A stretch of DNA of 64,000 nt, taken from positions 124,001 through 188,000 of the IMG/VR virus record IMGVR_UViG_3300010389_000001. The stretch is one strand, 5' to 3'. Shown here in pieces: positions 8,933 through 41,032 of this stretch (the stretch's first letter is position 1; each line of letters starts with the position of its first letter). The notes below the pieces were generated by a model that saw only the letters and a program-made list of their open reading frames with translations, had not been told where the DNA came from and did not search any database. Position numbers and translations under genes: made by a program.

Positions 8933-9421
8933 ATGGCTATAAATAGACTGAGAAAATTAAAATTATATAATAGAATAACAAAGATCGCCGAAGCAGATCA
9001 GCACGGCATCTTCGAAAGCTTTCAGGGCGCTTCCATAGAGGAAAATACCAGAGACAAGTATCTTAGCGAGAAGCATAATACGCCAGTCGACAGAACGACC
9101 GAAGCTCTCTACAACCTTGCTCCCGAGCATGCTGACAGCAATCCCAATACCACTGCCGCACCCAGCGCTCCCCTTTCCACTAGGTATGTACCAGGCCTCG
9201 CAGGAGTTCAATCAAGAAGAATAGGGGATGGGGTCGTCGAGGACCCTCTGACGGGCAAGAAGTTTGATTATAATGAGGGCTTTAAGATTGGGGATCAGGT
9301 ATACAATCCTGGCGACGTTTCCCTTCAGACTAGCTTAACTCATTTTGCAAATCACCTAGATAATATCGGACTTATAAAAGAAGCTGACCTAGTTGATGAA
9401 ATTATCTCTAGCATCAAATAA
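8933..9421 (+). CDS. hypothetical head-module protein with C-terminal helical-hairpin module
   Basis: 162-aa ORF ending ANHLDNIGLIKEADLV. Confidence 0.75.
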   Translation: MAINRLRKLKLYNRITKIAEADQHGIFESFQGASIEENTRDKYLSEKHNTPVDRTTEALYNLAPEHADSNPNTTAAPSAPLSTRYVPGLAGVQSRRIGDGVVEDPLTGKKFDYNEGFKIGDQVYNPGDVSLQTSLTHFANHLDNIGLIKEADLVDEIISSIK

Positions 9422-9444
9422 TATTCTGATTATTAAATTATAAT

Positions 9445-9482
9445 AATATCTCGGCATAGTAATATATAGCCGAGATATTTTT
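9445..9482 (+). terminator. 11-bp hairpin plus T tract
   Basis: AATATCTCGGC(9445-9455)...GCCGAGATATT(9469-9479), then T run; loop contains TAGTAAT. Confidence 0.6.
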
Positions 9483-10179
9483 GTATGGAGATAAGGTGAG
9501 CAAGAAAGTTTTAAATCATCCAGATAAGGAGGAGCTTATAAAAAGACTCCTGGAAGGGGAATCTGTAAAAGGCGTAGAGTCTTGGCTGAAAGATAAATAT
9601 CCTAGAAAGAAAAGAATGCATATATCTTACATGACTCTGCAAAAGTTTAGAACAGAACACCTAAATCTAAAGGGAGAAGTTCTTGAGGATATTAAGAACA
9701 GAAGAGTTGAGGTATCAAAAGAGGCTTCAGAAGCTGAAGCAAGAATGATCGTAAAAAACTCTTCTGCATACCAGCAGAAGATTGACGAAATTGTATCTGA
9801 AGAGCTGGATGCGACCAAACGCCTCCTCGAAATGGACGCTCTGATAAATTCCCGTATCGAATATTATTACAATCTTCTTCAGAATGGCGGCTCTATCAAG
9901 GAGGATAAGGTATTCCTGGATTACATTAACACAATGCGAGCCCTAATGCAAGACTGGAAGAAATACGTAGAGGGCTTTGCTGACCAGAAAATCGAGCATA
10001 ATATTAATATTAATGTTATTAACGAGCAGGCTAGGGTTCTTAGAGAATCTGTAATGGAGATATTGCATAAAATGGATCCAGATCTTATCCCCGTATTTGT
10101 GGACGCACTGAACAGAAGAATGGAAGATGGAGATAGAGAGGCGCCGAGGCTTATTAACCCTAATGTTATTGACGCTTAA
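9481..10179 (+). CDS. hypothetical protein, candidate terminase small subunit
   Basis: Helical N-terminus, coiled-coil core, late KIEHNININV strand; real start probably GTG at 9496; function is a guess. Confidence 0.35.
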   Translation: MYGDKVSKKVLNHPDKEELIKRLLEGESVKGVESWLKDKYPRKKRMHISYMTLQKFRTEHLNLKGEVLEDIKNRRVEVSKEASEAEARMIVKNSSAYQQKIDEIVSEELDATKRLLEMDALINSRIEYYYNLLQNGGSIKEDKVFLDYINTMRALMQDWKKYVEGFADQKIEHNININVINEQARVLRESVMEILHKMDPDLIPVFVDALNRRMEDGDREAPRLINPNVIDA

Positions 10180-10197
10180 AGCTCAACAGGAATTATA

Positions 10198-10458
10198 ATG
10201 CGAGTAAGAATAAACCCAAAACAAAATCTAAAAGAAAAAGCTAATTTGGAAAAAGAGCACATAAACTCTCTGACTTCTTTTAGAGGCTGGATAAGAGAAG
10301 TGACTGGCGACTATGAAGAGCGAGCGATTCCGAATGGCGAATTGGAGAAATACCTAGGGTACATAAGAACCGTCTTGGACAAGACGGTTGGATCAAATAA
10401 ATGGAAGTGGATAAAGGCAATAGAAAAACTCCAAGAAAAACTAAAGGAAGAGTCATAA
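10198..10458 (+). CDS. hypothetical protein
   Basis: 86-aa ORF tightly packed in operon. Confidence 0.7.
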   Translation: MRVRINPKQNLKEKANLEKEHINSLTSFRGWIREVTGDYEERAIPNGELEKYLGYIRTVLDKTVGSNKWKWIKAIEKLQEKLKEES

Positions 10459-10459: not shown

Positions 10460-11953
10460 ATGCCTAGAATAAATGATTATTTTAAAAACAAAATAATAAA
10501 CATGAACGAAGAAAGCAAGGACGCACTACTTCCGGTGGCGAAGAGGGCTGCTCACTTAACGGAAATAGGTATATCAAATGATGATGAGCTGGTAAAGTAT
10601 CTTTTCCTAGAGAGAGAGGCTGGTAAAATGAATGTTACTATTACCGACCGCATCGCTTCTGAGATAATAAAAAACTCAAGCGATACTGGAGACATACTTT
10701 ATGGGCTGCTAAAAAGAAAGATTTCAGATAGACAGCTAAAAAAAATCGCTTATCCAAATCCGGGACTTTCCGTTGATAGCCTCAACAAAGAAGTTGACCT
10801 CAACGAGTGGCTTGAGCTGGTCCACAAAATATACAAGGCATGCAAGCGTGGAGAGATGACAAAGCAAAAAGCTTTGGATTTTTATAGTAATAATTTGGAT
10901 AATGAAGAGAAGCAAAGATTTTTAAGATGGTTCGAATATTATAGCTCTGGTCAGCACCTTCAGTATCCAGCCATCAAACACTCAGATTATAAAGGAAAAG
11001 AGATGAAGAAAGAATCTGTATTTCAGTCAGGCTTAATCGGTTCCGGATTTTATGATCAGGATAACAACAGGCCTGGCAGCAGCTTTGGTGGCGGTGAGCC
11101 AAGCGCTAATGGTGGCAGTGCAGATCTAAGCGCCAAAGAAAAGCTCACTGCCTGGAAAAAGGCCATAAACAGAGCATGCAAGAGAATCGATACACTTCTT
11201 AGGGAGGGTGATATACCGTATGACTCTTACTCCCAGATGGCAAAGCACCTATTCGATCTAAGCTCTTTAATCAAGCAGGTTAAGATGGCAAGCACAATGA
11301 GCGATGTTACGCACAGAACTGCAAATATACTTAAGCAAGCTGGGCATCAGGAGCCCGCAAACATTTTGATAAAAATTGCTCAAGAAATATCCGAAGAAAA
11401 TGCCGTTCCGGCAGAGGGCCAGCCGGCAGCGGCAGAAGTTCCGGAGTCCACTCAGCCCGAAGCAGCACCTGTCGAAACTGGGCCAAGTCAGCAGGAGCAG
11501 AAATCTGGAGTAGAGGTGCCGGAACCGGACGCCGTAGAGCCTACAAAGCTTAGAGATATAGAGCCTATTCCCGGTCCGCAACCGGGTGAGTATGAGGCTC
11601 TGGCCGGAAATATAAACCTTGAAGATGCAGCCAAAAAGCTTGACGATGTCGCCGGCATGCTGGCAGATAGAAGAATCATTAGGCAGCTTGCAGAGTTTGA
11701 TATTATGCTTGATAAAATCGGCATCGCATCAATGTTCCCTGAGCTAGCAGAGTCTCAGAGTAAGCTTATTGACGCATTCTCCTATGCCCTTACTCGTGTC
11801 ACCAAGATGATGGGTCAGCTATCCAATGCAAAGACTCTTCTTGAGGCTGGAGGTCCGCTACCCGGCACTGGGGCCTCTGCTGCAATTGAAGCCCCAGAGG
11901 CAGCTCCAGAGGCAGCCCCTGAAGAGGTGGCAGGACAGCCTCCCACTGAGTAA
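10460..11953 (+). CDS. hypothetical head-module protein
   Basis: 497-aa ORF with several K-x-A/S motifs, Pro/Glu linkers and a helical-hairpin module. Confidence 0.8.
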   Translation: MPRINDYFKNKIINMNEESKDALLPVAKRAAHLTEIGISNDDELVKYLFLEREAGKMNVTITDRIASEIIKNSSDTGDILYGLLKRKISDRQLKKIAYPNPGLSVDSLNKEVDLNEWLELVHKIYKACKRGEMTKQKALDFYSNNLDNEEKQRFLRWFEYYSSGQHLQYPAIKHSDYKGKEMKKESVFQSGLIGSGFYDQDNNRPGSSFGGGEPSANGGSADLSAKEKLTAWKKAINRACKRIDTLLREGDIPYDSYSQMAKHLFDLSSLIKQVKMASTMSDVTHRTANILKQAGHQEPANILIKIAQEISEENAVPAEGQPAAAEVPESTQPEAAPVETGPSQQEQKSGVEVPEPDAVEPTKLRDIEPIPGPQPGEYEALAGNINLEDAAKKLDDVAGMLADRRIIRQLAEFDIMLDKIGIASMFPELAESQSKLIDAFSYALTRVTKMMGQLSNAKTLLEAGGPLPGTGASAAIEAPEAAPEAAPEEVAGQPPTE

Positions 11954-14902: not shown

Positions 14903-16675
14903 ATGTCTAAAGCTAGAAAAGAAAAAGAATTAATAGAGCAATTTAATAATAGCTTTCTAGACTTTGATCCCGCACATTTTTGCAAGAACAATCTAACTCT
15001 CGATGGATCTGAGTTTAATATAGTAGATTCTGGCTGGAAGTTTATGTCTGATGTGTACAGATATATAGCCTTAAATGCCACGAGAAAAGATGGTAAGCCA
15101 GTCGTCATCAAGAAGGGTCGTCAGGTTGGCGCTACGGTTATGGCTGCAGCGCTAGATCTCTTTTTTACGAATAGCGGCCTTTTTACCGAGCCAAATATAA
15201 GAGTTATACATCTATTCCCAGCATTAGGCCAGGTAAAGAAATTTTCTCAAGATAAGCTAGAAACGCTAATACGAACCGCAAAAGATAATTTTATAGAAAA
15301 GAATAAGCTAAATAGCGCCAATGCCGTTGACAACTTAACTATGAAGCAGTTTGAGACAGGCACCCTATGGATAGACAGCCTTGGCACGGATGGTGATAGA
15401 ATTCGTGGTATGACAGTTGATGTTGCGATGTATGATGAGGTTCAAGATATGCTTGGACACGCAATAGGTAACGCCACAAAAATTCTAACTGCCGCAAAAT
15501 ATGGTCCCGTCGGTCAGGGCGTGCAAGTTTACTTTGGAACTCCAAAAAGCAAAAATAGTCACTTCGCTACGATCTGGGACATGTCAGATCAGCGCTATTA
15601 TCACCTTGGATGTGTCAATTGCAGAAAGACTTACCCTTTCTATCTTCCTGATGATGACAGATGGAAATCTATTTGGCTCTATGAAAATATAGTTCAGTGT
15701 CCACTGTGCGGTACAAAGCAAACAAAGGTAGAGGCTATAGGGCGCGGGAAATGGGTCGGAACCAGGGATCCTGATAATTGCGACTTTGTAGGCTTTCATA
15801 TAAATCAACTTTATATCCCTTACTTTACAAAAGAAAATATAGAAAAGTTGATGCCTGAGAATAACCCGGCGCAGACAGAGAGAATCTGGAAGAACGAGGT
15901 CGTTGGGGAGTTTTACTCTGGCGCAGGCTCTCCTCTGACTAAATCGGAAATTTATAATTTATGCAGAGATCCGGATAGGCATTTTTCCAAAAGCATTCAG
16001 GGTAACACCAAGCCTGTATACTTGGGTGTAGACTGGGGCGGCAAAGATGATGATCCGGACTCTAGTGGCGGTCAGTCATTCTCCTGTGTTGTAATTTTGT
16101 CCGCTCAGCCAGATGGTACGCTGCTTGTTGAGCATGCTCATAAGCTAAGACAAAATACTTATGATTATAAAAAGAGCACAATAAAAGAAATGTACAGAAG
16201 GTTCTCTGTAACAAGAGGGGTTTCTGACTGGTTCTTCGGTCAAGATGTTGTGCATGATATACAGATGTTATACCGAGATAGATTTATTGGAGCGCAAGGA
16301 AGTGGAAGTCTAGCAAATCCCATGAAGTATAGAGAGGACGAGCTGATTATTTCTTATAATAAGGATTTATTAATTGACGAACTTATAGATCTGTTTAGAA
16401 AAGGAAAGATAAGATTTCCATGGAAAAGCTATGAATATCTTGAGTGGTTAATAGATCACTGCACATCGATGGAGTCAAAAATTAAGATCGTAGGCGGACA
16501 ACCTGTAAAGACATTTGTAAAAGGACCAGTTCCAAACGACGGCTTTATGGCTCTAATGTACGCCTACATGGCTTATAAGTTTGACCTAACAAAAGGCTTC
16601 AGTGTTAAGCCCGGATTTGAAAAAAGAGTAGAAATGCCAAGGGCAAGCATAGCCAATGTTAAGAGGAGAATTTAA
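14903..16675 (+). CDS. terL: terminase large subunit (GpA-like, with zinc finger)
   Basis: VIKKGRQVGAT Walker A, MYDEVQD Walker B, FGTP, CVNC...CPLC, GFHINQLY, LGVDWG nuclease motif. Confidence 0.92.
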   Translation: MSKARKEKELIEQFNNSFLDFDPAHFCKNNLTLDGSEFNIVDSGWKFMSDVYRYIALNATRKDGKPVVIKKGRQVGATVMAAALDLFFTNSGLFTEPNIRVIHLFPALGQVKKFSQDKLETLIRTAKDNFIEKNKLNSANAVDNLTMKQFETGTLWIDSLGTDGDRIRGMTVDVAMYDEVQDMLGHAIGNATKILTAAKYGPVGQGVQVYFGTPKSKNSHFATIWDMSDQRYYHLGCVNCRKTYPFYLPDDDRWKSIWLYENIVQCPLCGTKQTKVEAIGRGKWVGTRDPDNCDFVGFHINQLYIPYFTKENIEKLMPENNPAQTERIWKNEVVGEFYSGAGSPLTKSEIYNLCRDPDRHFSKSIQGNTKPVYLGVDWGGKDDDPDSSGGQSFSCVVILSAQPDGTLLVEHAHKLRQNTYDYKKSTIKEMYRRFSVTRGVSDWFFGQDVVHDIQMLYRDRFIGAQGSGSLANPMKYREDELIISYNKDLLIDELIDLFRKGKIRFPWKSYEYLEWLIDHCTSMESKIKIVGGQPVKTFVKGPVPNDGFMALMYAYMAYKFDLTKGFSVKPGFEKRVEMPRASIANVKRRI

Positions 16676-16677: not shown

Positions 16678-18360
16678 ATGACTAGAAGAACCAGCAGGCC
16701 TCCAATGGATATAACTAAAAAGACAGCAGATTCTCTATCTGAGTACCGGAGGGCGGAAATCTCCAACTCAGAAAATAGGCGTCTAGATGAGCAGGAAAAC
16801 TCTGGCTTGCAAGCTGCGGTAGCTCACAGTCATACCTTTAAAAAGAACAGCCTAAATATGATCAAGAGCGCATCGATAGTCTCTCCAATGATCGGCCCGA
16901 CTACTACTTCGACCACAGATCGCATGTCTCCGGAAATCTACTCCCCCCTATTCCAGCTGGCTAACTTAAATCTGCCGAGAGACCGCGTAACGATGAATGC
17001 CTGGAATAGGGTTTTCTACGATACGCACCCCATCGTAAGAAATGCCATTAACCTTCATGCATCATTTCCTATTAGCAAGATTAACATCACATGCAAAAAT
17101 AAGAAAGTTCAGCAATTCTTTATGGAGATGGCAGAAAGAATAGATCTGTACTCCGTTGTATATGGTGCTGCATTAGAATTCTGGAAGATGGGAGAGGCAT
17201 TTCCCTATGCAGAGCTTGATGAAAGCATGGGGGTCTGGAGTAGGGTTACGATTTTAAATCCAGACTATGTTCATGTAAAGAAATCTGTTATAGGAAATCA
17301 TACCCTTGTTTCTTTGAGGCCTGATGCGAATCTTATTAGAATAGTTAACTCGACTTCTCCATCCGATATAAATATGAAGAAGCATATACCAAAACATATT
17401 CTTTCTTACGTAAAGAAGGGGCACAATATTCCGCTTGATGCATTCAATGTTTCCCACCTAAAGCTGCTTAGTTCACCATACGATATTAGAGGCACATCTA
17501 TAATTGTATCAGTTTATAAAGATCTCATGCTATACGACAAGCTGAGAGAATCAAAATTTGCCCAGGCAGATGGTATGGTTAACCCACTGACCCTAGTTAA
17601 GCTTGGTGGCGAGGGAGACTATAGGCCGACCCAATCTGACATTGAAGCTTTTAAAAATGTGCTAGAAGAAGCTCAGTACGACAAAGACTTTAAGATTGTA
17701 ACGCATGCCGGAGTAAATATCGAAAGAGCAGGATTTTCTGGAGCAACGCTTGATATAGGTTCGGATATAGAGCATATACTTACCAATCTTTACGCCGGAC
17801 TTATGACTCCAAAGGCGATTATGGACTCGGAAGGTTCTACGTATGCCAGCTCATCCGTTGGCCTTGAAGTGCTGCGTCAACGATATGACATCTTTAGGAA
17901 TATGGTAAAAAAATGGCTGGAAAGAAAGATATTCGCGCCAATATGTGAGATTCAGGATTTCTTTGAATATAAAGATGGAGAAAAGAGACTTCTTGTTCCC
18001 TCTATTGACTTTAACCATATGAACCTATATGATATGGCCGACTTTATTCAGTCAGTAGGCCAGTTTGTCGGAAACAAGCAGGTATCTCTTCAAACTCTGC
18101 ACAGGAGCTTGGGATTAAGCTACGAAGAAGAGCGCAGGAGAATCAGGGAAGAGATGATCGACGAGCAGGTATTCGCGAAAGAGCAGCAGGTTCTTGGAAA
18201 TATGAAGCTTTCAGAGCTGATTGGAATAGACTCCTCCAAGGCTATTATAGAGCCTCCGGGAGAAGAGGCGGCGCCCGGGGCGCCTGCTGCAGAAGGCGGT
18301 GGCCTACCTGGAGTTGGAGGACCAGAGGGCGGCATGGGAGAAGGCCCTCCCGGCATCTAA
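16678..18360 (+). CDS. portal protein
   Basis: 560 aa directly after terL; helical with clip-like region (VTILNPDYVHV, YDIRGTSII), Gly/Pro-rich C-tail. Confidence 0.8.
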   Translation: MTRRTSRPPMDITKKTADSLSEYRRAEISNSENRRLDEQENSGLQAAVAHSHTFKKNSLNMIKSASIVSPMIGPTTTSTTDRMSPEIYSPLFQLANLNLPRDRVTMNAWNRVFYDTHPIVRNAINLHASFPISKINITCKNKKVQQFFMEMAERIDLYSVVYGAALEFWKMGEAFPYAELDESMGVWSRVTILNPDYVHVKKSVIGNHTLVSLRPDANLIRIVNSTSPSDINMKKHIPKHILSYVKKGHNIPLDAFNVSHLKLLSSPYDIRGTSIIVSVYKDLMLYDKLRESKFAQADGMVNPLTLVKLGGEGDYRPTQSDIEAFKNVLEEAQYDKDFKIVTHAGVNIERAGFSGATLDIGSDIEHILTNLYAGLMTPKAIMDSEGSTYASSSVGLEVLRQRYDIFRNMVKKWLERKIFAPICEIQDFFEYKDGEKRLLVPSIDFNHMNLYDMADFIQSVGQFVGNKQVSLQTLHRSLGLSYEEERRRIREEMIDEQVFAKEQQVLGNMKLSELIGIDSSKAIIEPPGEEAAPGAPAAEGGGLPGVGGPEGGMGEGPPGI

Positions 18361-19892: not shown

Positions 19893-20428
19893 AAAAGATT
19901 TCGTACAAGAATAAGGAGTACAAATCGAAAGCTCCGGTATCCGGCCCTCTGCCATCTGATATAGGCTCTGACGAGGATTATTCTGCTAATGCTCCAGGGA
20001 TTGGAAGAGGTTTGTCCATGCCGGGTGAAAAGGCTATACCGCTAAAGGATACGGATGAAAGCCGTGTCTTTTTAAAGAAAAAGGAACCGGAAGTTCCGCC
20101 TCCAGATCATAAGCGCATGCTGGATGTGTTTGTTGATCTTGCAGATAATCTGGATAAAAGTGGAGAATATGAGCTTGCTTCATTTGCGGATTTTCTTATA
20201 AGCAAAATAGCGCAGCAGAGGGACGCAGATTATGAGGCTTTGCTAAAAGACCTTATCGTAAAAATATCAAATTCTGATTTATTAAAGAAAAATAATTTAA
20301 TGATTAAAGTCGGAAGGTTATATAATGAAAAATTCTTAAGCCTTTATGATGAGCTTGGAGAGCAGGCCGCGCACAGAGAGGCTTATCAGTCGGCATTCAA
20401 ATTGGTTGAGCAGGAACTTGGAGTTTAA
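19889..20428 (+). CDS. hypothetical head-module protein with helical-hairpin module
   Basis: 179 aa; MKKISY start; ADNLDKSGEYELASFA. Confidence 0.75.
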   Translation: MKKISYKNKEYKSKAPVSGPLPSDIGSDEDYSANAPGIGRGLSMPGEKAIPLKDTDESRVFLKKKEPEVPPPDHKRMLDVFVDLADNLDKSGEYELASFADFLISKIAQQRDADYEALLKDLIVKISNSDLLKKNNLMIKVGRLYNEKFLSLYDELGEQAAHREAYQSAFKLVEQELGV

Positions 20429-23331: not shown

Positions 23332-26300
23332 ATGTTTAAGAAAGTATGTTTTTCTCCCGGAAGCGATGTAAAAACGCATTCTAACGAGGAAATTAAGGCT
23401 AATCCAGAAATTGTAAGCAGATTTACAAAGCTTGCAAAAAATCTAAAAAGTATAGCCCCGAAGTCTGATGACTTTCTTTATTTCTCAATCATCTTCTTAA
23501 AGGCGGCAGAGTCTGCCCTGCTAGATGAAAAAGGAAGTATAAAGAAGGTTGGCAGCGAAGATGCGTGGGGATTCTTTGATGAAAACTGGAATTGGCACGG
23601 AAATGTTAAGCCTCATAGAAATAACAATAAAGATATTTTCCCGGAAGCACAGCTAAAGTTAGCCACGCCACTTTGGATTGGCAAACCACTGTGCAGGGAT
23701 CACGAGTCAAGCTCTGTTGATGGAATTCGCGGAATTATTCTAGACACTTATTACGACGAGAAGTACAAGCAGGTTGTGGGTCTTTGTGCCCTAGATAAGG
23801 TAAATTACCCTTCTCTTGCGGCCAAGGTGCAGTCTGGACTTGTTCGCTATGGATCTATGGGTACTGCCGTAGAAACATCAATATGTACTGAGTGTTATAA
23901 TCGTGCCAGAACTCAAGACGAATATTGTCAGCACGTCCTAACTCGCACCGCTCATGGCGAAATTAATGTTGGCCTAAAGCCAATAGAGTACAGCCTTGTT
24001 GTTACTCCTGCTGAGCCAGGTGCTGTTCTTCTAAAGTGTATAGCTTCACTAAATGAATATCGCCAAGAGTTTGTTAACTATGGCGTTGATGACGTGCCCG
24101 AGATGCTTGGAAAACTTTCTGAAAAACAAGCTCAACATCTAGAGGGAATAATGAAGACTGCCTGTGGCGATGATGGATGCTCAATAACTGATCGCAAAAG
24201 AATTGTCACAAGCTTTTTGAGTAACAATGGCTTGATGAAGTCAGCAGAGTTTACACCTGAAGAATTAAGAAATCTAGCTGAAACCGCACAAACAGCTTCT
24301 GAACTTCCTGATAACATCGGGGGCCCACTTTCCAAAAGCGTTCAGGATCTTATTTCAAATGATGAATCTCTTACTTCTGGTGAGCCGGCCGCTCCCCACT
24401 TAGATGCAGCGTCTACCAGCATAGGTCTCCTTGGTAATGCTGCTCCGTCCGAAGGGAATTCGGACTTTCAAACCGATGGAGACCTGTTAGCACAAACTCT
24501 TCCGCCCGAGCAAAATCTTGTGGCGGTAGAAGCAAATAACAAAAACGTTAATGTCAGAAATGGCTCTGACAATGACGTTGATTTTGATAATTTAACAATT
24601 AGTTCAATTTTGGAGGACATCATGAACGAATCAAGGTTAAAGAAGAGAGCTGAGCTTCGCCGCCGTATTGCTTACATGCAGGGTGGAGCCGAAGGCGCAG
24701 AGCCCAACACCTATAAGAGTGAGCCGTTTGCCTGGGACCACGACAAGCAGATGCATCAGGAGCATTCTGGAGACACCGGAATGATGGCTGACGATGCTGC
24801 AGTCAAGGAAAAGCTTAGCCGAGCAGAGCTAAATGAAAGAAGAATTAAGAGAATGGCTTACATGCAGGGTGGCTCAGAGGGAAGAGAGCCCAACACTTTT
24901 AAGAGCGAAGATTTCGATAGAAATCAGGACAAGCAGATGCATCAGGACGGCAATATGGGCGGCGACAAGGGAGCGTTCCCCGGTGATGTCGAGAAGAAAA
25001 CGATGATGAGCAGGGCTGATGACGCCGCACCAATGAGAAAGGCGGCTTATGATGGCCCGTCACTAAGCACACGCTTCCTAGTGAAGAGAAGCGGTGCCGG
25101 CTCTGTTGATAGAGCAAACTCTGTTTTTCAGGTATTTGCAGGAGACAAGAAGGTTATCCAGGCTAAGGCATCCGAGATTTTTGGTCCGGAGCTAAACGAC
25201 AACTGGGATTGGCTAAGAAGCCGTGAGTACGGCAAAGAGGTATGCAGCCAGATCAGAGAAGCTGGCCTTGCTACTGTAGCAAACCTTCTTAAGTCAGCCC
25301 AGGAGCTAGAGCTTGACGCTCCTGCTGGCGAGGCAGGCGCGGAGGCACCTCCCATGGAGATGGAGGCCCCTGAGCTTCCTCCGATGGATGATGCACCGAT
25401 GGACGACGCTCCGATGGACGACGGTGCAGGGGAAGAGGAAGAAAATCCTGCAGACGCCATTGATGGCAGACTTGCCACGATAGAGGACGCCATTGACGAG
25501 ATTAGAGATCTCGTAGATGAGCTTCAGAGTGAGACCGGAAATGTGGATGTAAACGTATTCACCGGGAAGGGCGGAGAGGATATGGTCGATACCGAGATGA
25601 CAGCCCTATCCAGAGAGCTTTTGAATGGCCTAAAGGTTGCGCAGGCAAAGCTTGACACATCCGCTGATGAGCTAGCCATGGTTGGCGAGACATACGAGAA
25701 TATATCCAAGCTCTCTTCCGCTCAGGTCAAGGAGTTTAGAAAGCTCGCAAATGAGGCAATCAGAGACGCAGATCAGCTCTCCGGTGAGGCAAGAGGCCTT
25801 GTAAGCCTTGCTACTGCAATGAAGGCGGATATGGCCCCCACGATGGAGGACGCCGCATCTTACGCTGAGGACATGGAGAACGAGGCTGATTGCGCCGCTG
25901 CTGACGACACCGAGGAAAGCATGGCAGACGACGGTGGAGTTGCAGAGCTTATCGCTGCAGCCATGGAGCTTCGCAAGGAAAGAAGAGAGGGCCTTCTAAA
26001 GCAGTCTGAGGACAGAGTTCTTTCGCAGCGCAAGCAGGCGAGAGAGGCAATTCTCAAGTCAGCAATGGAAGTGGTAAATGAGGATGAGGCAGAGGACAAG
26101 GTAATTGAAGAGGAGCCCACTCCAGATCCTAAGGCTGACGACGATGCCACGGCCGCCGACGCGCTTGAGAGTGTGGCATCAAACGATGGTGCTAGCGCGC
26201 TCAAAGAGGCTCTTGCTGCTAACATGAAGAAAGCAGAGGAGAGCGATGCAAGAGAAGCTTACAGAACCAAGCTAAGAAGAGCTTATGATGTTGGCCTAGA

Positions 26301-26553: not shown

Positions 26554-27093
26554 ATGCATAGTTTAAAATCAAATGGCGATTTCTTAGCGCAGGAATTTGC
26601 AAAAATTCTTGGAGTAAAGCAGGATGGCATTGAAAAGTCAGCAAGCCTAGAGGGCGCTCCTGTCGACGCAACCGTTGAAGCGGCAGCTGCTGATAGTGCT
26701 CTTGAGAACTCTGCGGAAGACAAAAGCCTTGAGGATGACATTGCTGATATGCTAATCGAGCCCACAGATGAAGGGGCAAATATGGCCTCTGACTCTCTCG
26801 ATGAAGCGGTAGATGAGCTTAATGCTTACGACGGGCTAGACGACAAGCATGCAAAGATTATGCTTGGCCTAAACAAGATCGCAACAAGTCTCCGAGGAAA
26901 GGACGAGTCATTTGCTGCTGATGTTGTCGAGGCAACAGCCCTTAGCATCATGGACGATCTAAAGAAGGAAGCTGCAAGAAGTAACTTTGTATGTGACCAG
27001 CTCAGCAAAATTGCTGCAGATCTAGATGCTTCTGGAGATGATTTTTCTGCTGATATGGTAAGAGTAACTTTGTCTAGAATAAAGAACTCATAA
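26554..27093 (+). CDS. acidic head-module protein with two helical-hairpin modules
   Basis: KIATSLRGKDESFAADVV and KIAADLDASGDDFSADMV. Confidence 0.8.
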   Translation: MHSLKSNGDFLAQEFAKILGVKQDGIEKSASLEGAPVDATVEAAAADSALENSAEDKSLEDDIADMLIEPTDEGANMASDSLDEAVDELNAYDGLDDKHAKIMLGLNKIATSLRGKDESFAADVVEATALSIMDDLKKEAARSNFVCDQLSKIAADLDASGDDFSADMVRVTLSRIKNS

Positions 27094-27923: not shown

Positions 27924-27952
27924 TATTGAAAAAATAAAAGAGAGATTATACA

Positions 27953-28345
27953 ATGAAAAATCTATGGAGCAAAGAGGATCTGGCTAACTTCAATAATAGC
28001 GAAGTTTTCTCTGAATTAGAGGCAAGAGTTTTAGATACAATAAAGCGAGCCGACATTCTTTCCGCAAAGATTGCGCAGGAGACTGCCCAGCAGAAGGCTG
28101 ACGCCTTTAAAAATCTGGCTAATTCTGCAGAATTAGCCGCTAGCTCCGTTGAAAAGCTTAACAAAGCTATTATGTCTGCTGATGACGAAGAGCTTGATGA
28201 TGAAGATGATGCGGCATTTGATGGCATTGTGGAAGAGCTAACTTCTATGGCAAAGCTTGCAATAGATCAGGGAGATTATAAGCTTGCCTACAGAATAGAG
28301 CGCACAATAGATGAGATCTTGGAGCCAGAAGTAAAATGCGAATAA
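27953..28345 (+). CDS. hypothetical head-module protein
   Basis: 130 aa, acidic linker, C-terminal helical hairpin. Confidence 0.75.
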   Translation: MKNLWSKEDLANFNNSEVFSELEARVLDTIKRADILSAKIAQETAQQKADAFKNLANSAELAASSVEKLNKAIMSADDEELDDEDDAAFDGIVEELTSMAKLAIDQGDYKLAYRIERTIDEILEPEVKCE

Positions 28346-30324
28346 ACAAGATTTCACAGTCTGATTCCTTTGATCTTTATGCAAAAACTCTTTCTTCTTT
28401 TTTGGCAAAGCAAGATAGCTCTGAAGATCTCGTTAAGACGGCCAGCCTTTTCGGCGAGGTGCTCGGACTAATCGGTTCAAGCGGAAAAAATGTTCTTAAA
28501 GCCCTCACTTCCGGTGAATCAGCAAAGGCCTTAAAGGCAGGAGGGGATGTAACTTTTGTCAAAGTTTTAGAAGATGCTGATATCGCGGCCGATGAAGCAG
28601 TCGCAGCAGCAAAAAGCGCATATCCAGATGAAGCTTTCGAACTTTTTTTCAAAGACGAAGAAACTCTTAAAAACTTATATAAATATGAATCATTATTAAA
28701 GGCAAGGGATGCTTATACCGATGAAGCAGTAATAAAAAGCATTAATGATCAGATTGAAGAGTTAAGCAGAGCATTAGAGGATAAACTACCGTTAAATAAT
28801 CCCGAATTGCTAGACCTTTTTAAAAAAGCAAGGCTAAAATATACTCCATCTGAAATGCCTGGAAATGTTGATGACTTGAGGAGGGGTCTCGGGCTGATGG
28901 AAGATAGCCCAGTCCCTACCCCCGGGGCAGGCAAAGCAATTGCCGAAGAAGCGTCTGAAGAAGCAGCGCAAAAAAGCATGAAGGCAGCAGTTGATGCGGG
29001 AGATCTTGAAGGAGCCAATAAGATTGGCGTAGAACTAGCCAAGGCCAAGGAAGCGCATCTAAAAAAGATAGATGAAGCACTTAAGGATCTAAAGAAAAAA
29101 TGGTGGAGAGGAGATCTGAAAACACCAGAGTATAACAAGCTGGCCGACATGTATAAGGCGCAAGCAAAAAATCTGCAAGGATCTACAGACTCCCTTCTGT
29201 CAACGCTCGGAGGTTGGGCGAAAAACCTAGCGGCTTTCAGCATTCTCAAAAATCTAGCTTTAGCCGCAGGACTGATCTTTGCTGGCAAGGCTGGCTACGA
29301 CTGGTATACCAGCGATGAAGAAGCAGATTTGGAAGAAAATCTGGAACAGAGATCAAAGCCGGAATTTGACGAAGAAGTCGTAACGATAGCTCCAGAAGAA
29401 TTTAAGGCAAAAAGAGCCTTTGATAAAGATGATAATCAGTTAATGCAAGAAGCTATAAGGGCTGCAGATGGAGAAACTCTTGAGTATATCAAAAATTTAT
29501 ACAAGAAAGAATTGGCCCTAGAGCTTCCGGAAGAATTCGAAGGTATGACTCACGTATTTATGACCCCCAAGGTGGGTGGCGCAAAAATTCAGGACCCAAG
29601 ATTTAGAGAGGGCTACCTGAGAGCCCTGATTGATTACCTAAAAACAAATGCAGGAGCAGAAACTTACGGTATTTATCTGAGCAGCGAGAGGTCCCCTCAG
29701 CATGCTCTAAATGCGGCTGCTGAAAAAGCAATTAATCTACAGCTTTGGAAAAAGAATTTATTCAGAAATCGCGGAAGGAGATGGCTGAAGGGCAAAAGGC
29801 TAAAAGGAGGTCCGGGAATGCTAGGTTCAGAGAGAGCAGACGTACCAAGAAAAGTCAGGAGGGCTCATGCTGATAATCCAGATAGACTTCAAAAACTATC
29901 TCATTTTAGAGATGTTTCACTAGAAACTACTAATAATCATTCAATTAATGATGTTAATCTGCTAAAAAAGGCAGATGAAATGTCAAAGTCTTACCACAAG
30001 GATGCCGTAAAGGATCTGGCCGGGGAAGACAAAGCACTCCGAGAATATTTTACAGGTCTAGGAAGACTGTATGATGCTGAATCGGAAAAAAGAAATCCAG
30101 ATTACGAGGAGCTAAACAAACTTCATGATGAAACAGGCCGAGATTTAACTCTTTCGGCGCATCCAAAAGCAATCAGAGTATCTGATGCAATGGGTAACGG
30201 CGGATTGGTTGAAAATGGTTTGGAGCAAAAAGAGAAGTTAGAGGAAGTGGCGCTAAGCGCACCGACTGGCAACTTTACATCTAGATACGCTAAGCTGAAA
30301 AACTTGTTGATTAAATCAAAGTAA
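28336..30324 (+). CDS. helical head-module protein, candidate internal/ejection protein
   Basis: 662 aa; hydrophobic stretch at ~29227-29286; K-x-A/S motifs. Confidence 0.7.
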   Translation: MRINKISQSDSFDLYAKTLSSFLAKQDSSEDLVKTASLFGEVLGLIGSSGKNVLKALTSGESAKALKAGGDVTFVKVLEDADIAADEAVAAAKSAYPDEAFELFFKDEETLKNLYKYESLLKARDAYTDEAVIKSINDQIEELSRALEDKLPLNNPELLDLFKKARLKYTPSEMPGNVDDLRRGLGLMEDSPVPTPGAGKAIAEEASEEAAQKSMKAAVDAGDLEGANKIGVELAKAKEAHLKKIDEALKDLKKKWWRGDLKTPEYNKLADMYKAQAKNLQGSTDSLLSTLGGWAKNLAAFSILKNLALAAGLIFAGKAGYDWYTSDEEADLEENLEQRSKPEFDEEVVTIAPEEFKAKRAFDKDDNQLMQEAIRAADGETLEYIKNLYKKELALELPEEFEGMTHVFMTPKVGGAKIQDPRFREGYLRALIDYLKTNAGAETYGIYLSSERSPQHALNAAAEKAINLQLWKKNLFRNRGRRWLKGKRLKGGPGMLGSERADVPRKVRRAHADNPDRLQKLSHFRDVSLETTNNHSINDVNLLKKADEMSKSYHKDAVKDLAGEDKALREYFTGLGRLYDAESEKRNPDYEELNKLHDETGRDLTLSAHPKAIRVSDAMGNGGLVENGLEQKEKLEEVALSAPTGNFTSRYAKLKNLLIKSK

Positions 30325-30388
30325 AACCTAGACAATATATTCAATGGTTGAATATATTAAACTTTAGAATAATTCAGGAGAATTAAAA

Positions 30389-30997: not shown

Positions 30998-31013
30998 GGC
31001 ATAGGAGGATAAA

Positions 31014-32024
31014 ATGTCAAATCTATTCAATACACATGGTGAAATCAATGCCTCCAATGTCACCGAGGCACTATCACAGATTGTTAAGTACGCCTCCATC
31101 ATTGAGGATCTACAGCCCTCCAGCTCCGCTCAGGCTGCTGCTCCCTCACTAAATGATGGCCAGCGCGACGAGATGATCAAGCAGGCGCTTATGACCCAGG
31201 AGGGCAAGATTGCTCTCGGTCAGGCAATGGCTAACCCAATCCGTAGAAACCTTGACTACCAGGGCGTTGCTCGTAAGGCTCTCGTAGTTGACCCTCTACC
31301 CCAGGGCGCTCTACCCGTCTACGATCGTGATATCGACGTAGCTGCTGTTGTTGTTTCCAGCAACGGTGCTGCTCCCGAGTCACGCGTCTTCGGCGACAGA
31401 GTAACTGTTCCTGAGTTTGAGGTTGTTTCTAACCCGACCGTCCGTATCGCTGAGGTCAAGCGTCGTCGTTTCAACGTAATCGACCGTGCTCAGCAGAAGG
31501 CTCGTCAGGAGATCCAGGCGCAGGAGGATGCGAACGTATTCTCAGCTCTCACCTTCGCTGGCGACAGCACCCTTGGTGGCGAGAACGCAGCTGTAGCTCT
31601 TGATCCTGCCGCTGCCGGCTCCCTCAACAAGGACGGCCTCGTCAATCTCAAGAGACAGATTGATCGTTGGGACCTAGTTACTTCCAAGTACTTCATGAAC
31701 ATCAACGAGTTCACTGACATTCTCACCTGGGAATCTGCCGGTGGCACAAACTCACAGGTTGATCCCGTCACGCAGCGCGAGCTTCTACAGACCGGCCTAT
31801 ACGGCCACGTCTTTGGCGCCGATATCATCGTCTCCAAGGTCGTTCCTGTAAATCGTGCTTTCGCTACGGCCGACCCCGAGTTCGTAGGTGTCATGCCTGT
31901 ACGTCAGGACATCGAGGTTCTACCCGCCGACGAGCCCAAGCAGCTTAAGCTTGGTTGGGTTGTCAACGAGATCATCGGTGTTGGCATCGTCAACCCCCGT
32001 GGTGTTGCAACGGGTACCATCTAA
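31014..32024 (+). CDS. major capsid protein (HK97 fold)
   Basis: 336 aa, AGGAGG RBS, terminator downstream; PIRRNLDYQGVARK, RVTVPEFEVVSNP, GLYGHVFGADIIVS. Confidence 0.85.
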   Translation: MSNLFNTHGEINASNVTEALSQIVKYASIIEDLQPSSSAQAAAPSLNDGQRDEMIKQALMTQEGKIALGQAMANPIRRNLDYQGVARKALVVDPLPQGALPVYDRDIDVAAVVVSSNGAAPESRVFGDRVTVPEFEVVSNPTVRIAEVKRRRFNVIDRAQQKARQEIQAQEDANVFSALTFAGDSTLGGENAAVALDPAAAGSLNKDGLVNLKRQIDRWDLVTSKYFMNINEFTDILTWESAGGTNSQVDPVTQRELLQTGLYGHVFGADIIVSKVVPVNRAFATADPEFVGVMPVRQDIEVLPADEPKQLKLGWVVNEIIGVGIVNPRGVATGTI

Positions 32025-38407: not shown

Positions 38408-38409
38408 CG

Positions 38410-38736
38410 ATGGCAATGGGAAGCTATAAATTGGGAGCGTCAGTAAGGATTCCTCTAATAGTTATTGACAATGGTGTTGCTTTTACTGAAGAAATTAATC
38501 CAATTATAAAAGAGATAATAAAGCCAAATAATACTGTTGCCTCAGGATTTCCTAGGACAATGACTCTTGCAAATGAGGAGTATGGAACTTATTATTATGA
38601 GTATACCCCTGACATACCGGGTGACTATATTGTTATTCTATGCTATGAAGCCTTTTCTCAAGAGTATACTTTAATCGAAAATTTCACAGTTAACCCAGAA
38701 GTTATTGGGCAAATACCAAGGGCGGAGGCTAGATAA
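38410..38736 (+). CDS. Ig-like virion protein
   Basis: GTYYYEYTPDIPGDYIV beta-sandwich pattern. Confidence 0.55.
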   Translation: MAMGSYKLGASVRIPLIVIDNGVAFTEEINPIIKEIIKPNNTVASGFPRTMTLANEEYGTYYYEYTPDIPGDYIVILCYEAFSQEYTLIENFTVNPEVIGQIPRAEAR

Positions 38737-39644
38737 TGACGAACAACAGAAATAGAGCTATCAGAGGCGAGAACGTTGAGTTAAGTATCCAGTATTATGG
38801 TGTTGACGGACTTCCTGCTGACGCGGATTCGGCGCCTCAGATAAGAATAACGAATCCAGATGGCAATGTTGTTGTTGCCGCAACCTCTTCTGGCATAACA
38901 AGGGCAGATATTGGGTTGTACGTTTATACTTATCCGATAGGTTCATCTGTAGAAAAAGGACTATGGACAGATACGTGGATCGCGCAGATCGATGGAGCGA
39001 CCTTATCTAATGAGTTTAAGTTTCTTGTCGTCGATGAGGCATCGGCGACCGCCGGAGCTATAAGGCTCGGCGATGAAGTGGAGTTTGATTTCTCAGAAGC
39101 AGAATTAGTCGGCTTAAATATTCTCTTAAAATACCTCAAGGCAAGAGTTAGGTCTGATGGTCAAAAGCCATCAAGAGATGAGTACGGAGCCTTTATTTAC
39201 GATGGTTATGGCGAAGTCGTTATGGAAGAGTGTAATGTTTTTTCCGATGAGATTCTGGCTTGCTTTTTATGCTCTGCATTATCAGAATTTAATATGGTCC
39301 CATTCTTTACCTCATATTCTTTCGCTGATGAAATTATATATAAAACATTCTCTCATGCAATTGTTGAGGGAGCGACAATCTTGGCTCTATCATCTCAGGC
39401 TCTAGTGGAAAAAGGAAGAGACTTCACCATATCCGATGGAGGTATATCTTATCAGCCTCCTGCCCTGGGGGACTTCCTCGCCTCAACTTACAACAACTTT
39501 TTGACATCATACAGGGAGAGGTTGAAGTTTATAAAGAATTCAATTAGACCTGGACCACAATCATTTGGAACTTATACGAATTTAAGCTCCGGAGCCCCAG
39601 CATTTACAAGACTAAGGCACCAGAGGTCTCGCAAAATCATCTAG
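38736..39644 (+). CDS. Ig-like domain plus probable head-tail adaptor (neck) domain
   Basis: N-terminal ITNPDG...GLYVYTY...GLWTDTW; helical C-terminal domain with DGGISY strand. Confidence 0.55.
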   Translation: MTNNRNRAIRGENVELSIQYYGVDGLPADADSAPQIRITNPDGNVVVAATSSGITRADIGLYVYTYPIGSSVEKGLWTDTWIAQIDGATLSNEFKFLVVDEASATAGAIRLGDEVEFDFSEAELVGLNILLKYLKARVRSDGQKPSRDEYGAFIYDGYGEVVMEECNVFSDEILACFLCSALSEFNMVPFFTSYSFADEIIYKTFSHAIVEGATILALSSQALVEKGRDFTISDGGISYQPPALGDFLASTYNNFLTSYRERLKFIKNSIRPGPQSFGTYTNLSSGAPAFTRLRHQRSRKII

Positions 39645-39703
39645 GGGCTAAATTAATAACTAATATTATTATATCTGCTGCTAATATTCTGCAATTAAAT
39701 ATA

Positions 39704-41032
39704 ATGAATAGTAGAATAAAAAAAATAGCTTTTTTTAATAAAATAGCCGCATCAATTCAGAGTATAGTTAATCTAGGCTATCCCGAAATAATTGCTAAAA
39801 TATTTATAGATCGCTTTGGCGAAAATGCTCATGTTATAGCTAGATGGATGAACGATTATCACACTGAAGGTCTTAGGCATAATTCTCCTAAGGACTGGCT
39901 GATGAGCCTTACTTTTATTGGCGGGGACAGGATGAGGATAGCTCTTCAGAGGTATCTTGCGGCTATTGCTGGAGAAGAAGAATATGATAAATGGGCCGAA
40001 GAATTTGGGTACCTTCCACTAAGTGAATGTGGTTATAGCTTTGCCACGGGGGAATCATACCCAATGGATATAAAAGATATGATTAAATTTTCGAAAGAAG
40101 AACTGGAAGAACGGTTTAATAAAGATATATTTTTTGACCGAGATTTAATAAGAGATATAGTTTCTGGTGCGCTAAAAGATGTTAAGCCATATAAAAAATT
40201 AAGTTATTATGATGCTAGAGATAAATATTTGAAGAAAAAAATACTATTTGATTATCCGGAGATTATGGCATTTGAAGACGGATATCGCTGGGTTGATGTC
40301 GGAAGAAAGTGTGATGTAATTGGAAAAAAAATGAAAAATTGCGGATCAACTGGTGTTATGGGCATGGATAAAGATAGAGTAATGTTAACGCTTTTGGATA
40401 AGTCCAATAATCCCCATATTGTCGCTACCCTTCATCCAAATGAGAAAAGAATAAGTGGATTTGAAGGTGCCGCGAGTTCTGCTCCAAAACAGAAGTATCA
40501 CAAATATATTTTAAATTTGATCGATCACCTAGGAGTAAGGTTTGAAGAAAAAAGTGGTTACTCAAAATCTGCAATACTAGACTTTAAATATCTCCTGCGA
40601 GATCTAAGCCCTAAAATTGAAAAGATTAATTCTAGCGACTCCTCTGACGAATATTTTAAAATAAATATAAATGATACAATATGGTTTGCTAGTCCGCATT
40701 TTTTTGTATCTGAAGAGGATGCTTTAAAGATATTTGAATATTTAAAAAATAATAAAGAATATATGGAAAATAAAAGAAAATTTAGCGGCAAAGAAGAGGG
40801 TTATGACTTTTCATATGAAGATATGATGCCGGGAATTATACCAGGAAGGTCAGATCATAGGGAAAAATATGAAAAAGATCTTGGAGTTAAATTCCATGGA
40901 AAACATTCGAAAAATCTTTTGAATATATTATCTGGCGAAACTAATATTGATAAAAAAATAGCCGCACTTTCGAGATGGCTAATAGCAGGCGGTTATGCCT
41001 ACGAAGCCAAGAGGCTCTATTCCTCTTCTTGA
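39704..41032 (+). CDS. hypothetical protein with PcfJ-like domain
   Basis: MKNCG...MLTLLDKSNNPHIVATL...ISGFEG; KIA motifs at both ends. Confidence 0.55.
   Translation: MNSRIKKIAFFNKIAASIQSIVNLGYPEIIAKIFIDRFGENAHVIARWMNDYHTEGLRHNSPKDWLMSLTFIGGDRMRIALQRYLAAIAGEEEYDKWAEEFGYLPLSECGYSFATGESYPMDIKDMIKFSKEELEERFNKDIFFDRDLIRDIVSGALKDVKPYKKLSYYDARDKYLKKKILFDYPEIMAFEDGYRWVDVGRKCDVIGKKMKNCGSTGVMGMDKDRVMLTLLDKSNNPHIVATLHPNEKRISGFEGAASSAPKQKYHKYILNLIDHLGVRFEEKSGYSKSAILDFKYLLRDLSPKIEKINSSDSSDEYFKININDTIWFASPHFFVSEEDALKIFEYLKNNKEYMENKRKFSGKEEGYDFSYEDMMPGIIPGRSDHREKYEKDLGVKFHGKHSKNLLNILSGETNIDKKIAALSRWLIAGGYAYEAKRLYSSS

What the first reader, a model, noticed from the sequence alone, without database searches (positions are those of the whole stretch)
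9341..41017. Solitary 16-aa TPR-spaced helical hairpin shared by six unrelated proteins
Seen, with identical spacing A-x2-L-x3-G-x4-A-x2-hydrophobic: ANHLDNIGLIKEADLV (~9347), ANILKQAGHQEPANIL (~11321), ADNLDKSGEYELASFA (~20141), ATSLRGKDESFAADVV (~26881), AADLDASGDDFSADMV (~27013), AKLAIDQGDYKLAYRI (~28250), SRWLIAGGYAYEAKRL (~40970). Most abut or overlap a K-x-A motif. Known: the 3/4/5 spacing matches TPR positions 8/11/15/20, but TPRs normally occur in tandem arrays. Inference: a portable docking module that lets different cargo proteins co-assemble in trans into the prohead core and is then released by the protease. Together with the cleavage motif this would be a tag-and-release packaging system, the best candidate here for an undescribed system.
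Basis: partly seen in the sequence, partly recalled or inferred. Interest (0 to 1): 0.72.

Follow-up and report, generated by a model that had tools for sequence, protein, structure and literature searches.

The report
Portable helical-hairpin tag in jumbo phage
An uncultivated marine jumbo phage carries a previously uncatalogued 33-residue two-helix module on at least 14 unrelated proteins, including a scaffold-like protein next to the capsid gene, so it looks like a portable docking tag, possibly for loading proteins into the capsid, though that role is untested.

Summary
All seven peptides sit at the stated coordinates. The strict pattern occurs 13 times in the 232.5-kb genome, against 1.0 ± 0.9 in shuffled proteins.

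**What the motif is.** The 16-residue motif is the core of a 33-34-residue helix-turn-helix module. Profile searches find 15 copies in 14 proteins of this genome.

**Where it occurs.**
- The carriers share nothing outside the module.
- Copies lie at N-termini, C-termini or internally.
- The module is gained and lost among orthologues, and selection acts on the protein rather than the DNA.
- It matches 2,772 protein clusters in metagenomes, almost all viral.
- Pfam, PHROGs and PDB sequences do not contain it. It is not a TPR by any test run here.

**Link to the capsid.** A tandem pair forms the conserved C-terminal core of an acidic 179-residue protein between the prohead protease and the capsid gene. 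67 of its 68 homologues carry the module. Other head-cluster proteins also end in it.

**Best reading.** It is a portable docking hairpin, most likely used in prohead assembly and cargo recruitment, like the T4 capsid-targeting sequence or the P22 scaffold hairpin. Confidence is about 0.4.

**Not supported.** Release by the protease has no evidence. Complex prediction gave no answer.

The parts
9323..9418 (+). Module copy at the C-terminus of the 162-aa protein 8933-9421
   Evidence: Profile hit E 1.4e-15. Among orthologues the module is present in G003 (two copies) and G004, absent in G001 and G005, and degenerate in G002.
11297..11398 (+). Internal module copy (aa 280-313) of the 497-aa protein 10460-11953
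   Evidence: Profile hit E 1.8e-14. The hairpin is conserved in all five orthologues examined.
20117..20218 (+). Internal module copy (aa 77-110) of the 179-aa protein 19889-20428, two genes downstream of the portal gene
   Evidence: Profile hit E 5.2e-15. Conserved in all five orthologues.
26857..26958 (+). First, degenerate module copy (aa 102-135) of the acidic 179-aa protein
   Evidence: Not found by the first profile. Orthologues have the canonical K-G here. It scores E 1.5e-13 with the broadened profile. AF2 gives helices 97-115 and 119-160 with pLDDT above 90.
26989..27090 (+). Second module copy, at the C-terminus (aa 146-179) of the acidic 179-aa protein
   Evidence: Profile hit E 1.3e-13. 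In 57 of 68 homologues the last module ends within 8 residues of the C-terminus.
26554..27093 (+). Scaffold-like acidic protein: disordered acidic N-terminal part plus two hairpins
   Evidence: It lies directly after the protease-domain gene and 4 kb upstream of the capsid gene in every relative checked. The family's median pI is 4.4, and 67 of 68 homologues carry the module. AF2 model.
28226..28324 (+). Divergent module-like C-terminal hairpin of the 130-aa protein 27953-28345
   Evidence: HMM not significant (E about 1.3). The C-terminus is strongly conserved across the 17 aligned orthologues, of about 40 found in the loci. hhalign against the module gives probability 65%, P 5.9e-5, 33 gapless columns.
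40970..41017 (+).
   Evidence: No profile signal. The orthologue's C-terminus shows only a weak resemblance to the second half of the module.
28336..30324 (+). 662-aa head-cluster protein whose orthologues end in a module; this copy stops just before it
   Evidence: The 885-aa orthologue in G001 and two ORFs in L086 (1048 aa and 151 aa) end in the module.
23332..26544 (+). 1070-aa protein with a prohead-protease domain (aa 97-247) and a long acidic extension
   Evidence: phrog_18299 head maturation protease, E 6e-11. Sequence.
31014..32024 (+). Major capsid protein
   Evidence: phrog_2522, E 2.4e-73. 53% identical to Bacillus phage G gp27.
16678..18360 (+). Portal protein
   Evidence: phrog_16240, E 2e-47.
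14903..16675 (+). Large terminase subunit. In many relatives a variable gene with an N-terminal module sits just upstream, between the homologues of 13195-14265 and 14275-14901
   Evidence: phrog_675, E 3.9e-59. Insertion hot spot shown.

Best explanation
The motif is the core of a 33-34-residue helix-turn-helix module that is specific to one phage lineage and is not in the curated libraries. The first helix covers roughly residues 1-13, the turn sits at an invariant glycine (position 16), and the second helix covers roughly residues 18-32.

I read the module as a portable protein-protein docking unit. In the head gene cluster, two copies form the conserved C-terminal core of an acidic scaffold-like protein, and related head-cluster proteins also end in the module.

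The proposed mechanism is as follows. The hairpins expose a hydrophobic face. That face either pairs with another hairpin to form a four-helix unit or binds the inner surface of the capsid protein. The two-copy scaffold-like protein is thereby incorporated into the assembling prohead. Unrelated proteins carrying one copy, at either end, are recruited to the same place and packaged. This is functionally like the T4 capsid-targeting sequence.

Shown: the existence, extent, fold class, portability, conservation and genomic positions of the module. Inferred: the binding partner, packaging of the tagged proteins, and any later release.
For: **Statistics and extent:**
- 13 strict matches against 1.0 expected.
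- 15 profile-supported copies in 14 proteins.
- 2,772 protein clusters with E <= 1e-3 among 1.84 billion representatives, 306 of them with E <= 1e-10.

**Portability:**
- In the top 150 hits, 123 copies are N-terminal, 22 C-terminal and 72 internal.
- Carriers are unrelated once the module is masked.
- 105 module proteins from related contigs fall into 84 cargo families.
- The module is gained and lost in the 8933-9421 family.
- Codon positions 1+2 are 69% identical against 47% for position 3, and flanks are at random level.

**Fold:**
- AF2 models the scaffold-like protein as helices 97-115, 119-160 and 163-178 with pLDDT above 90.
- A natural 67-residue protein made of two modules is predicted as a compact four-helix fold, pLDDT 89.9 and pTM 0.76. 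Modules can therefore pack on each other.

**Head context:**
- The gene order is portal, protease-domain protein, acidic two-module protein, then the capsid gene, and it is conserved in relatives.
- 67 of 68 homologues of the acidic protein carry the module, 62 carry two, and 57 end with it.
- The 885-aa orthologue and the L086 ORFs directly upstream of the capsid gene end in the module.
- The 130-aa family has a divergent copy.
- Relatives carry variable module-tagged genes inside the late region, next to the terminase.

**Precedents:** T4 capsid-targeting sequence (PMC3012670) and the P22 and phi29 scaffold helix-loop-helix (PMC3185693).
Against: - Ten of the 15 copies in this genome lie in two loci (33-42 kb and 68-70 kb) with no recognisable structural genes.
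- Carriers on other contigs sit among nucleotide-metabolism, sigma-factor, ClpP and topoisomerase genes.
- The phage is uncultivated (an IMG/VR contig), so no virion proteome exists.
- The three-chain complex prediction (capsid protein, scaffold-like C-terminus, N-terminal module) scored 0.01. The tool states this is no evidence either way.
- No consistent protease-type site follows the module.
- The N-terminal type and the head type differ at most polar positions, so they may not share a partner.
- The scaffold assignment rests on position, acidity and architecture only. There are no family or fold matches.
- The promoter comparison was uninformative.
Confidence: 0.4

Rival explanations
1. 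The module is a general self-association or hetero-association hairpin. It makes its carriers dimerise or oligomerise through four-helix pairing and has no particular link to the capsid. Its presence in head-cluster proteins would reflect only that scaffold-like proteins also need to oligomerise.
For: - The natural two-module protein is predicted as a compact four-helix fold.
- Natural proteins made only of two or three modules exist.
- Most copies lie outside structural loci.
- Cargo domains seen among homologues are LysM, EF-hand, AP2 and zinc ribbon, which are not typical virion parts.
Against: - Polar surface positions are strongly conserved across hundreds of otherwise unrelated N-terminal copies. 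That suggests one common partner rather than many independent dimers.
- The tandem pair is conserved as the core of a protein placed between protease and capsid genes.
- Module loss from the 8933-9421 family leaves the core protein intact.
Confidence: 0.28
2. The module docks its carriers onto some other common hub. Candidates are a phage or host machine such as a chaperonin, RNA polymerase, a protease complex or the cell envelope. It would serve to localise or regulate early effector proteins.
For: - Hypervariable clusters of small module-tagged genes have separate terminator-like hairpins and show no cargo homology between close relatives.
- Two phage GroEL homologues lie within a few kb of four carriers.
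- Carrier contexts elsewhere include sigma-factor and ClpP genes.
Against: - No candidate hub was identified or tested.
- This reading does not explain why the conserved core of a head-cluster protein is two modules.
- The proximity to GroEL may be coincidence.
Confidence: 0.2
3. The motif is a solitary or degenerate TPR, or a chance pattern.
For: - The unit is 33-34 residues long and is a helix-turn-helix with small residues at the helix packing positions.
- The two-module model gives weak, non-significant Foldseek matches to designed TPR and helical-repeat proteins (TM 0.4-0.66, E > 0.6).
Against: - No TPR or any other Pfam family hits the modules at E <= 10, the carriers at E <= 1, or the 150 homologues at E <= 1e-3.
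- The conserved turn glycine and the K-E-A-D signature are not TPR consensus positions.
- Chance is excluded by the shuffle test and by the 2,772 database hits.
Confidence: 0.03

Closest known systems
T4 capsid-targeting sequence (CTS) of the internal proteins
   Same: A short conserved N-terminal tag on a highly diverse set of small proteins encoded in variable loci. The tag alone directs otherwise unrelated proteins into the scaffolding core of the prohead (PMC3012670). Here, eight tandemly encoded small proteins share only residues 1-34.
   Different: The T4 CTS is about 10 residues, strictly N-terminal and removed by the prohead protease. This module is a folded 33-34-residue hairpin. It is also found at C-termini and internally, no cleavage site could be shown, there is no sequence relationship, and packaging is untested.
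C-terminal helix-loop-helix coat-binding domain of P22 (and phi29) scaffolding proteins
   Same: A helix-loop-helix at the C-terminal end of an assembly protein encoded next to the capsid gene (PMC3185693). Here a tandem pair ends the acidic protein upstream of the capsid gene.
   Different: No detectable sequence or fold match to any solved structure. In P22 the hairpin is confined to the scaffolding protein, whereas here the same module is spread over dozens of unrelated proteins. Binding to the capsid protein is not shown.
Herpesvirus protease and scaffold proteins sharing a C-terminal capsid-binding tail; encapsulin cargo-loading peptides (both from general knowledge, not tested here)
   Same: Several different proteins carry the same terminal docking element that brings them inside an HK97-fold shell. 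In relatives of this phage a roughly 1050-residue ORF and a small ORF upstream of the capsid gene end in the same module.
   Different: Those tags are short linear peptides, not a folded hairpin, and there is no homology.
Tetratricopeptide repeat (TPR)
   Same: A unit of about 34 residues with helix-turn-helix architecture. Tandem copies are predicted to stack.
   Different: No TPR profile match. Different conserved positions. At most 2-3 copies, usually one. The fold matches are not significant.

Membership tests
TPR (Pfam TPR clan) | Significant match to a TPR profile | tested here: not met
   No TPR family hit for the 14 modules at E <= 10, for the carriers at E <= 1, or for 150 homologues at E <= 1e-3.
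TPR (Pfam TPR clan) | Tandem arrays of three or more contiguous repeats | tested here: not met
   93 of the top 150 homologues have one copy, 47 have two and 10 have three, usually separated by linkers. This genome has one two-copy protein.
TPR (Pfam TPR clan) | Antiparallel helix-turn-helix of about 34 residues | tested here: met
   AF2 models. This feature is generic and not sufficient for membership.
T4-type capsid-targeting sequence | Conserved terminal tag on diverse, otherwise unrelated small proteins in variable loci | tested here: met
T4-type capsid-targeting sequence | Prohead-protease cleavage site directly after the tag | tested here: inconclusive
   Positions 31-34 are hydrophobic, then A or S, then often E, Q or D. 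Glutamate reaches only about 30% at either position 33 or 34, and this genome's own copies lack a common motif. The protease's specificity is unknown.
T4-type capsid-targeting sequence | Carriers present inside proheads or virions; tag sufficient for packaging | not testable with these tools
   Uncultivated phage, so no proteome exists. Complex prediction gave no answer.
P22/phi29-type scaffolding protein coat-binding hairpin | C-terminal helix-loop-helix on an assembly protein encoded beside the capsid gene | tested here: met
P22/phi29-type scaffolding protein coat-binding hairpin | Sequence or fold homology to P22 gp8 or phi29 gp7 | tested here: not met
   No PDB sequence hit at E <= 10 apart from one chance-level match. 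No significant Foldseek match in PDB or BFVD.
P22/phi29-type scaffolding protein coat-binding hairpin | Binds the capsid protein | tested here: inconclusive
   Complex prediction score 0.01, which the tool declares to be no evidence for or against binding.
Helix-hairpin-helix (HhH), EF-hand and dockerin motifs | Profile match, or a G-h-G hairpin or calcium-binding loop | tested here: not met
   No such Pfam hit on the modules. Single Dockerin and EF-hand hits among the 150 homologues were not mapped to the module; the one such hit located in this genome, in the 188-aa protein at genome 68751, lies at residues 59-68, in the cargo.

The most novel reading that the evidence does not exclude
An abundant clade of uncultivated marine jumbo phages uses a folded 33-residue hairpin as a universal address label. 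The scaffold-like core protein carries two copies. Dozens of hypervariable effector proteins carry one copy at either end, pair with the scaffold's copies (or bind the same capsid site), and are thereby packaged and delivered into the host. This would be a structurally new, position-independent counterpart of the T4 capsid-targeting sequence. It would define the injected arsenal of these phages directly from sequence.
Probability: 0.3. Interest if true: 0.8.

Novelty: new variant of a known kind. Interest (0 to 1): 0.6.

Why it matters
If the module is a capsid-targeting or docking tag, three things follow.
- A simple profile search would list the packaged or co-assembled protein set of a widespread, uncultivated group of marine jumbo phages. 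That set runs to hundreds of cargo families, most of unknown function and likely involved in host takeover or counter-defence.
- It would be a second, structurally different example of tag-directed protein packaging in tailed phages.
- A compact tag that works at either end of a protein would be a useful tool for loading proteins into phage capsids.

Even if the capsid link fails, this is an uncatalogued, highly mobile protein-interaction domain with thousands of members.

Tried and rejected
- **Complex prediction.** Capsid protein plus scaffold-like C-terminus plus N-terminal module gave no answer. I do not use it as evidence.
- **Promoter comparison.** I compared upstream regions of carriers and structural genes to time their expression. 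An AT-rich TATAATATA-like element precedes the sheath and protease genes, with a shorter variant before 27217-27909. It is too rare to classify the carriers, and the sigma-70 scan was near background.
- **Cultured-phage searches.** tblastn of one module and of carrier 8933-9421 against 50,697 phage records found nothing, as did megablast of 22 kb of the window. The nearest cultured relative by capsid protein, Bacillus phage G, has no module.
- **Family and fold annotation.** PHROGs and Pfam on the carriers and their neighbours gave almost nothing. Foldseek against PDB and BFVD had no significant match. The ESM Atlas returned only unnamed viral clusters.
- **Literature.** Searches for DUF6847 and for module peptide strings found nothing relevant.
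- **RNA data.** Metatranscriptome contigs cover scattered parts of 26554-32024, mostly the capsid gene. They cannot show timing or even exclude DNA carry-over.
- **Rejected readings.**
  - Chance is excluded.
  - A DNA-level repeat is excluded.
  - TPR, HhH, EF-hand and dockerin membership found no support: the module matches no Pfam family.
  - K-x-A as an independent cleavage motif is rejected, because it is part of helix 2.
- **Bacterial genomes.** A degenerate DNA pattern found 26 stretches in 596 Gb. Only three short MAG contigs hold full modules, so the module is essentially viral.

Full report
**What the window is**

The window is bases 124,001-188,000 of a single 232,533-bp contig. The contig is an IMG/VR record of an uncultivated virus. 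It is linear, and CheckV estimates it at 68% complete.

Nearly all genes lie on the + strand. The recognisable genes, with their window coordinates, are:

| Gene | Coordinates |
|---|---|
| GroEL homologue | 2038-3675 |
| UvsX-like recombinase | 3686-5245 |
| tRNA nucleotidyltransferase | 11953-12714 |
| Large terminase | 14903-16675 |
| Portal | 16678-18360 |
| 1070-aa protein, prohead-protease domain at aa 97-247 | 23332-26544 |
| Major capsid protein | 31014-32024 |
| Tail sheath | 55664-58939 |

The capsid protein is 53% identical to gp27 of Bacillus phage G. More than 400 IMG/VR contigs encode capsid proteins 76-97% identical to it, among them a complete 335-kb genome with terminal repeats. 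The phage therefore belongs to a large, uncultivated clade of aquatic jumbo phages. Homologues come from Tara Oceans and other marine samples.

**Checking the observation**

The strict pattern occurs 13 times in the 308 proteins I called on the whole genome. Two hundred shuffles gave 1.0 ± 0.9, with a maximum of 3. Two of the 13 are ordinary chance hits in very large proteins. The other 11 belong together.

Extending the alignment showed that the 16 residues are the centre of a 33-34-residue unit:
- a first amphipathic helix
- a turn at an invariant glycine
- a second helix with a K-E-A-D signature, ending in I-I-x-K-hydrophobic-A

Iterated profile searches and a six-frame search of the genome agree on 14 proteins. 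Adding orthologous head-type copies to the profile gives 15 copies.

- 9347, 11321, 20141 and 27013 are strong hits, with E from 1e-13 to 1e-15.
- 26881 is the degenerate first copy of a tandem pair. Its orthologues are canonical.
- 28250 is not significant by HMM.
- 40970 has no support.

Ten more copies lie outside the window. Eight are at residues 1-34 of small proteins encoded in a row at genome 33-42 kb. The other two sit on adjacent genes at 68-70 kb: one at the C-terminus of a 188-aa protein with an HExxH motif, and one probably N-terminal, at residues 15-48 of the called ORF, starting at an internal ATG.

**Nature of the module**

The carriers really are unrelated. With the module masked, no pair reaches E < 0.3.

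Conservation is on the protein, not the DNA. Among eight copies, codon positions 1+2 are 69% identical and position 3 is 47% identical. The flanks are at random level, 25-33%.

AlphaFold2 models the C-terminal 80 residues of the two-copy protein with pLDDT above 90. The model has three helices, and two hairpins share one long central helix. A natural 67-residue protein that consists only of two modules is predicted as a compact four-helix fold, with pLDDT 89.9 and pTM 0.76. This suggests that modules can pack against each other.

A profile of the 14 copies finds 2,772 clusters with E ≤ 1e-3 among 1.84 billion representative proteins, 306 of them with E ≤ 1e-10. In the best 150:
- 123 copies are N-terminal, 22 C-terminal and 72 internal
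- 57 proteins have two or three copies
- almost none has any Pfam domain (LysM three times, otherwise single odd hits)

The module is essentially viral:
- A degenerate DNA pattern finds 86 stretches on about 55 IMG/VR contigs. Most loci with enough ORFs share homologues with this genome, or lie on contigs of this clade already found through the capsid-protein search; a minority have no detectable link.
- The same pattern finds only three full modules, on short MAG contigs, in 596 Gb of bacterial genomes.

The module is not in Pfam, PHROGs or any solved structure's sequence. Phage G lacks it.

**Portability**

The 105 distinct module proteins on the IMG/VR loci fall into 84 cargo families. Only 14 of them have a cargo homologue in this genome, and 12 of those belong to the 8933-9421 family.

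Within that family the conserved core protein carries the module in some relatives, twice in one of them, and lacks it in others. By contrast, the internal copies in 10460-11953 and 19889-20428 are conserved in every orthologue examined.

Close relatives carry between 2 and 15 copies, often in clusters whose cargo is not shared between genomes. Many relatives have a variable gene with an N-terminal module inserted just upstream of the terminase genes. This genome has none at that site.

**Link to head assembly**

The 179-aa protein 26554-27093 follows the protease-domain gene directly. It lies about 4 kb upstream of the capsid gene in every relative checked.
- Its N-terminal half is acidic and is predicted to be disordered.
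- Its conserved part is the two modules.
- Of 68 homologues, 67 carry the module, 62 carry two copies, and 57 end within 8 residues of the last copy. The family's median pI is 4.4.

Position, composition and architecture all resemble a scaffolding or core protein with a C-terminal helix-loop-helix, as in P22 and phi29 (PMC3185693).

Three further head-cluster families show the same ending:
- The 130-aa protein has the divergent copy.
- The 662-aa protein's orthologues end in a module: 885 aa in the complete genome G001, and two ORFs in L086 directly upstream of the capsid gene. The window's own copy stops just before it.
- The 179-aa protein near the portal gene has a conserved internal copy.

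Small, diverse proteins that share only an N-terminal tag and are encoded in variable loci match the pattern described for T4 internal proteins and their capsid-targeting sequence (PMC3012670).

**What is not shown**

No tool result places any carrier in a particle. The phage is uncultivated.

The single complex prediction scored 0.01. By the tool's own statement this is not evidence in either direction.

Most copies in this genome lie in loci without recognisable structural genes. Carriers on other contigs lie among metabolic and regulatory genes.

The N-terminal type and the head type differ at most polar positions, so they may not share a partner.

Nothing supports release by the protease.

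The TPR idea fails every sequence test. On structure it survives only as a generic helix-turn-helix resemblance.

**Verdict**

This is a real, uncatalogued, highly mobile 33-34-residue hairpin domain.

That it is a portable interaction or docking module is well supported, at about 0.75. That its role is recruitment into the prohead is the best single mechanism but remains an inference from gene context and analogy, at about 0.4. The rivals are a general oligomerisation domain, at about 0.28, and docking to another hub, at about 0.2.

The tag-and-release concept is a new variant of a known kind, not a new kind of system.

Noticed in passing
window 2038-3675 and genome 65172-66773 (L002 upstream part): The phage encodes two GroEL-like chaperonins. 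Each lies a few kb from module-bearing genes.
   Followed up: no
window 32870-34123: A class I/II aminotransferase (Pfam E 4.8e-33) is encoded about 850 bp downstream of the capsid gene, inside the structural region.
   Followed up: no
window 34854-37298: An 814-aa protein in the structural region carries a bactofilin domain (Pfam E 6e-14).
   Followed up: no
window 20771-23029: A 752-aa protein between the portal and protease genes contains a DUF192 domain (E 3.4e-21).
   Followed up: no
window 23332-26544: The protease-domain protein has a long acidic extension containing a duplicated roughly 40-residue segment (R-I/M-A-Y-M-Q-G-G...E-P-N-T-Y/F-K-S-E). Near its C-terminus there is a hairpin-like stretch with longer loops than the module.
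   Followed up: partly
window 28336-30324 versus L078:6645-9302 and L086: Orthologues of this 662-aa protein end in a module. The window's copy terminates about 20 residues into the equivalent region, so the module has been lost here.
   Followed up: yes
between window 13195-14265 and 14275-14901 (relatives: L094, L107, L110, L118, L124-L127, L137, L138, L143, L146, L159, L163): In relatives this is an insertion hot spot just upstream of the terminase genes. It holds one or two variable genes with an N-terminal module and differing cargo, one of them PilZ-like by eye. This genome's site is empty.
   Followed up: partly
P0121, P0094, P0039, P0004 (metagenomic proteins): Natural proteins that consist only of two or three modules joined by short linkers. 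They could act as multivalent adaptors.
   Followed up: partly
genome 73389-74222 (L002:7389-8000): An ORF matches phrog_1211, annotated as a 2-amino(oxy)adenylosuccinate synthetase-type enzyme, with E 1.4e-36. This is possibly a PurZ/PurA-like gene, which raises the question of modified adenine in the DNA.
   Followed up: no
genome 39725-40723 and 68751-69317 (L001:7725-8723, L002:2751-3317): Two carriers look enzyme-like by eye. One has a glycine-rich loop followed by a lysine, as in protein kinases. The other has an HExxH zinc-protease motif and an EF-hand-like loop. Neither reaches a Pfam threshold.
   Followed up: partly
window 58994-60739: An HNH-type homing endonuclease gene sits directly downstream of the tail sheath gene.
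   Followed up: no
window 26554-32024: Three aquatic metatranscriptome runs hold contigs 90-100% identical to parts of this stretch, mainly the capsid gene and its upstream neighbour. Close relatives are therefore present, and possibly transcribed, in those samples.
   Followed up: partly
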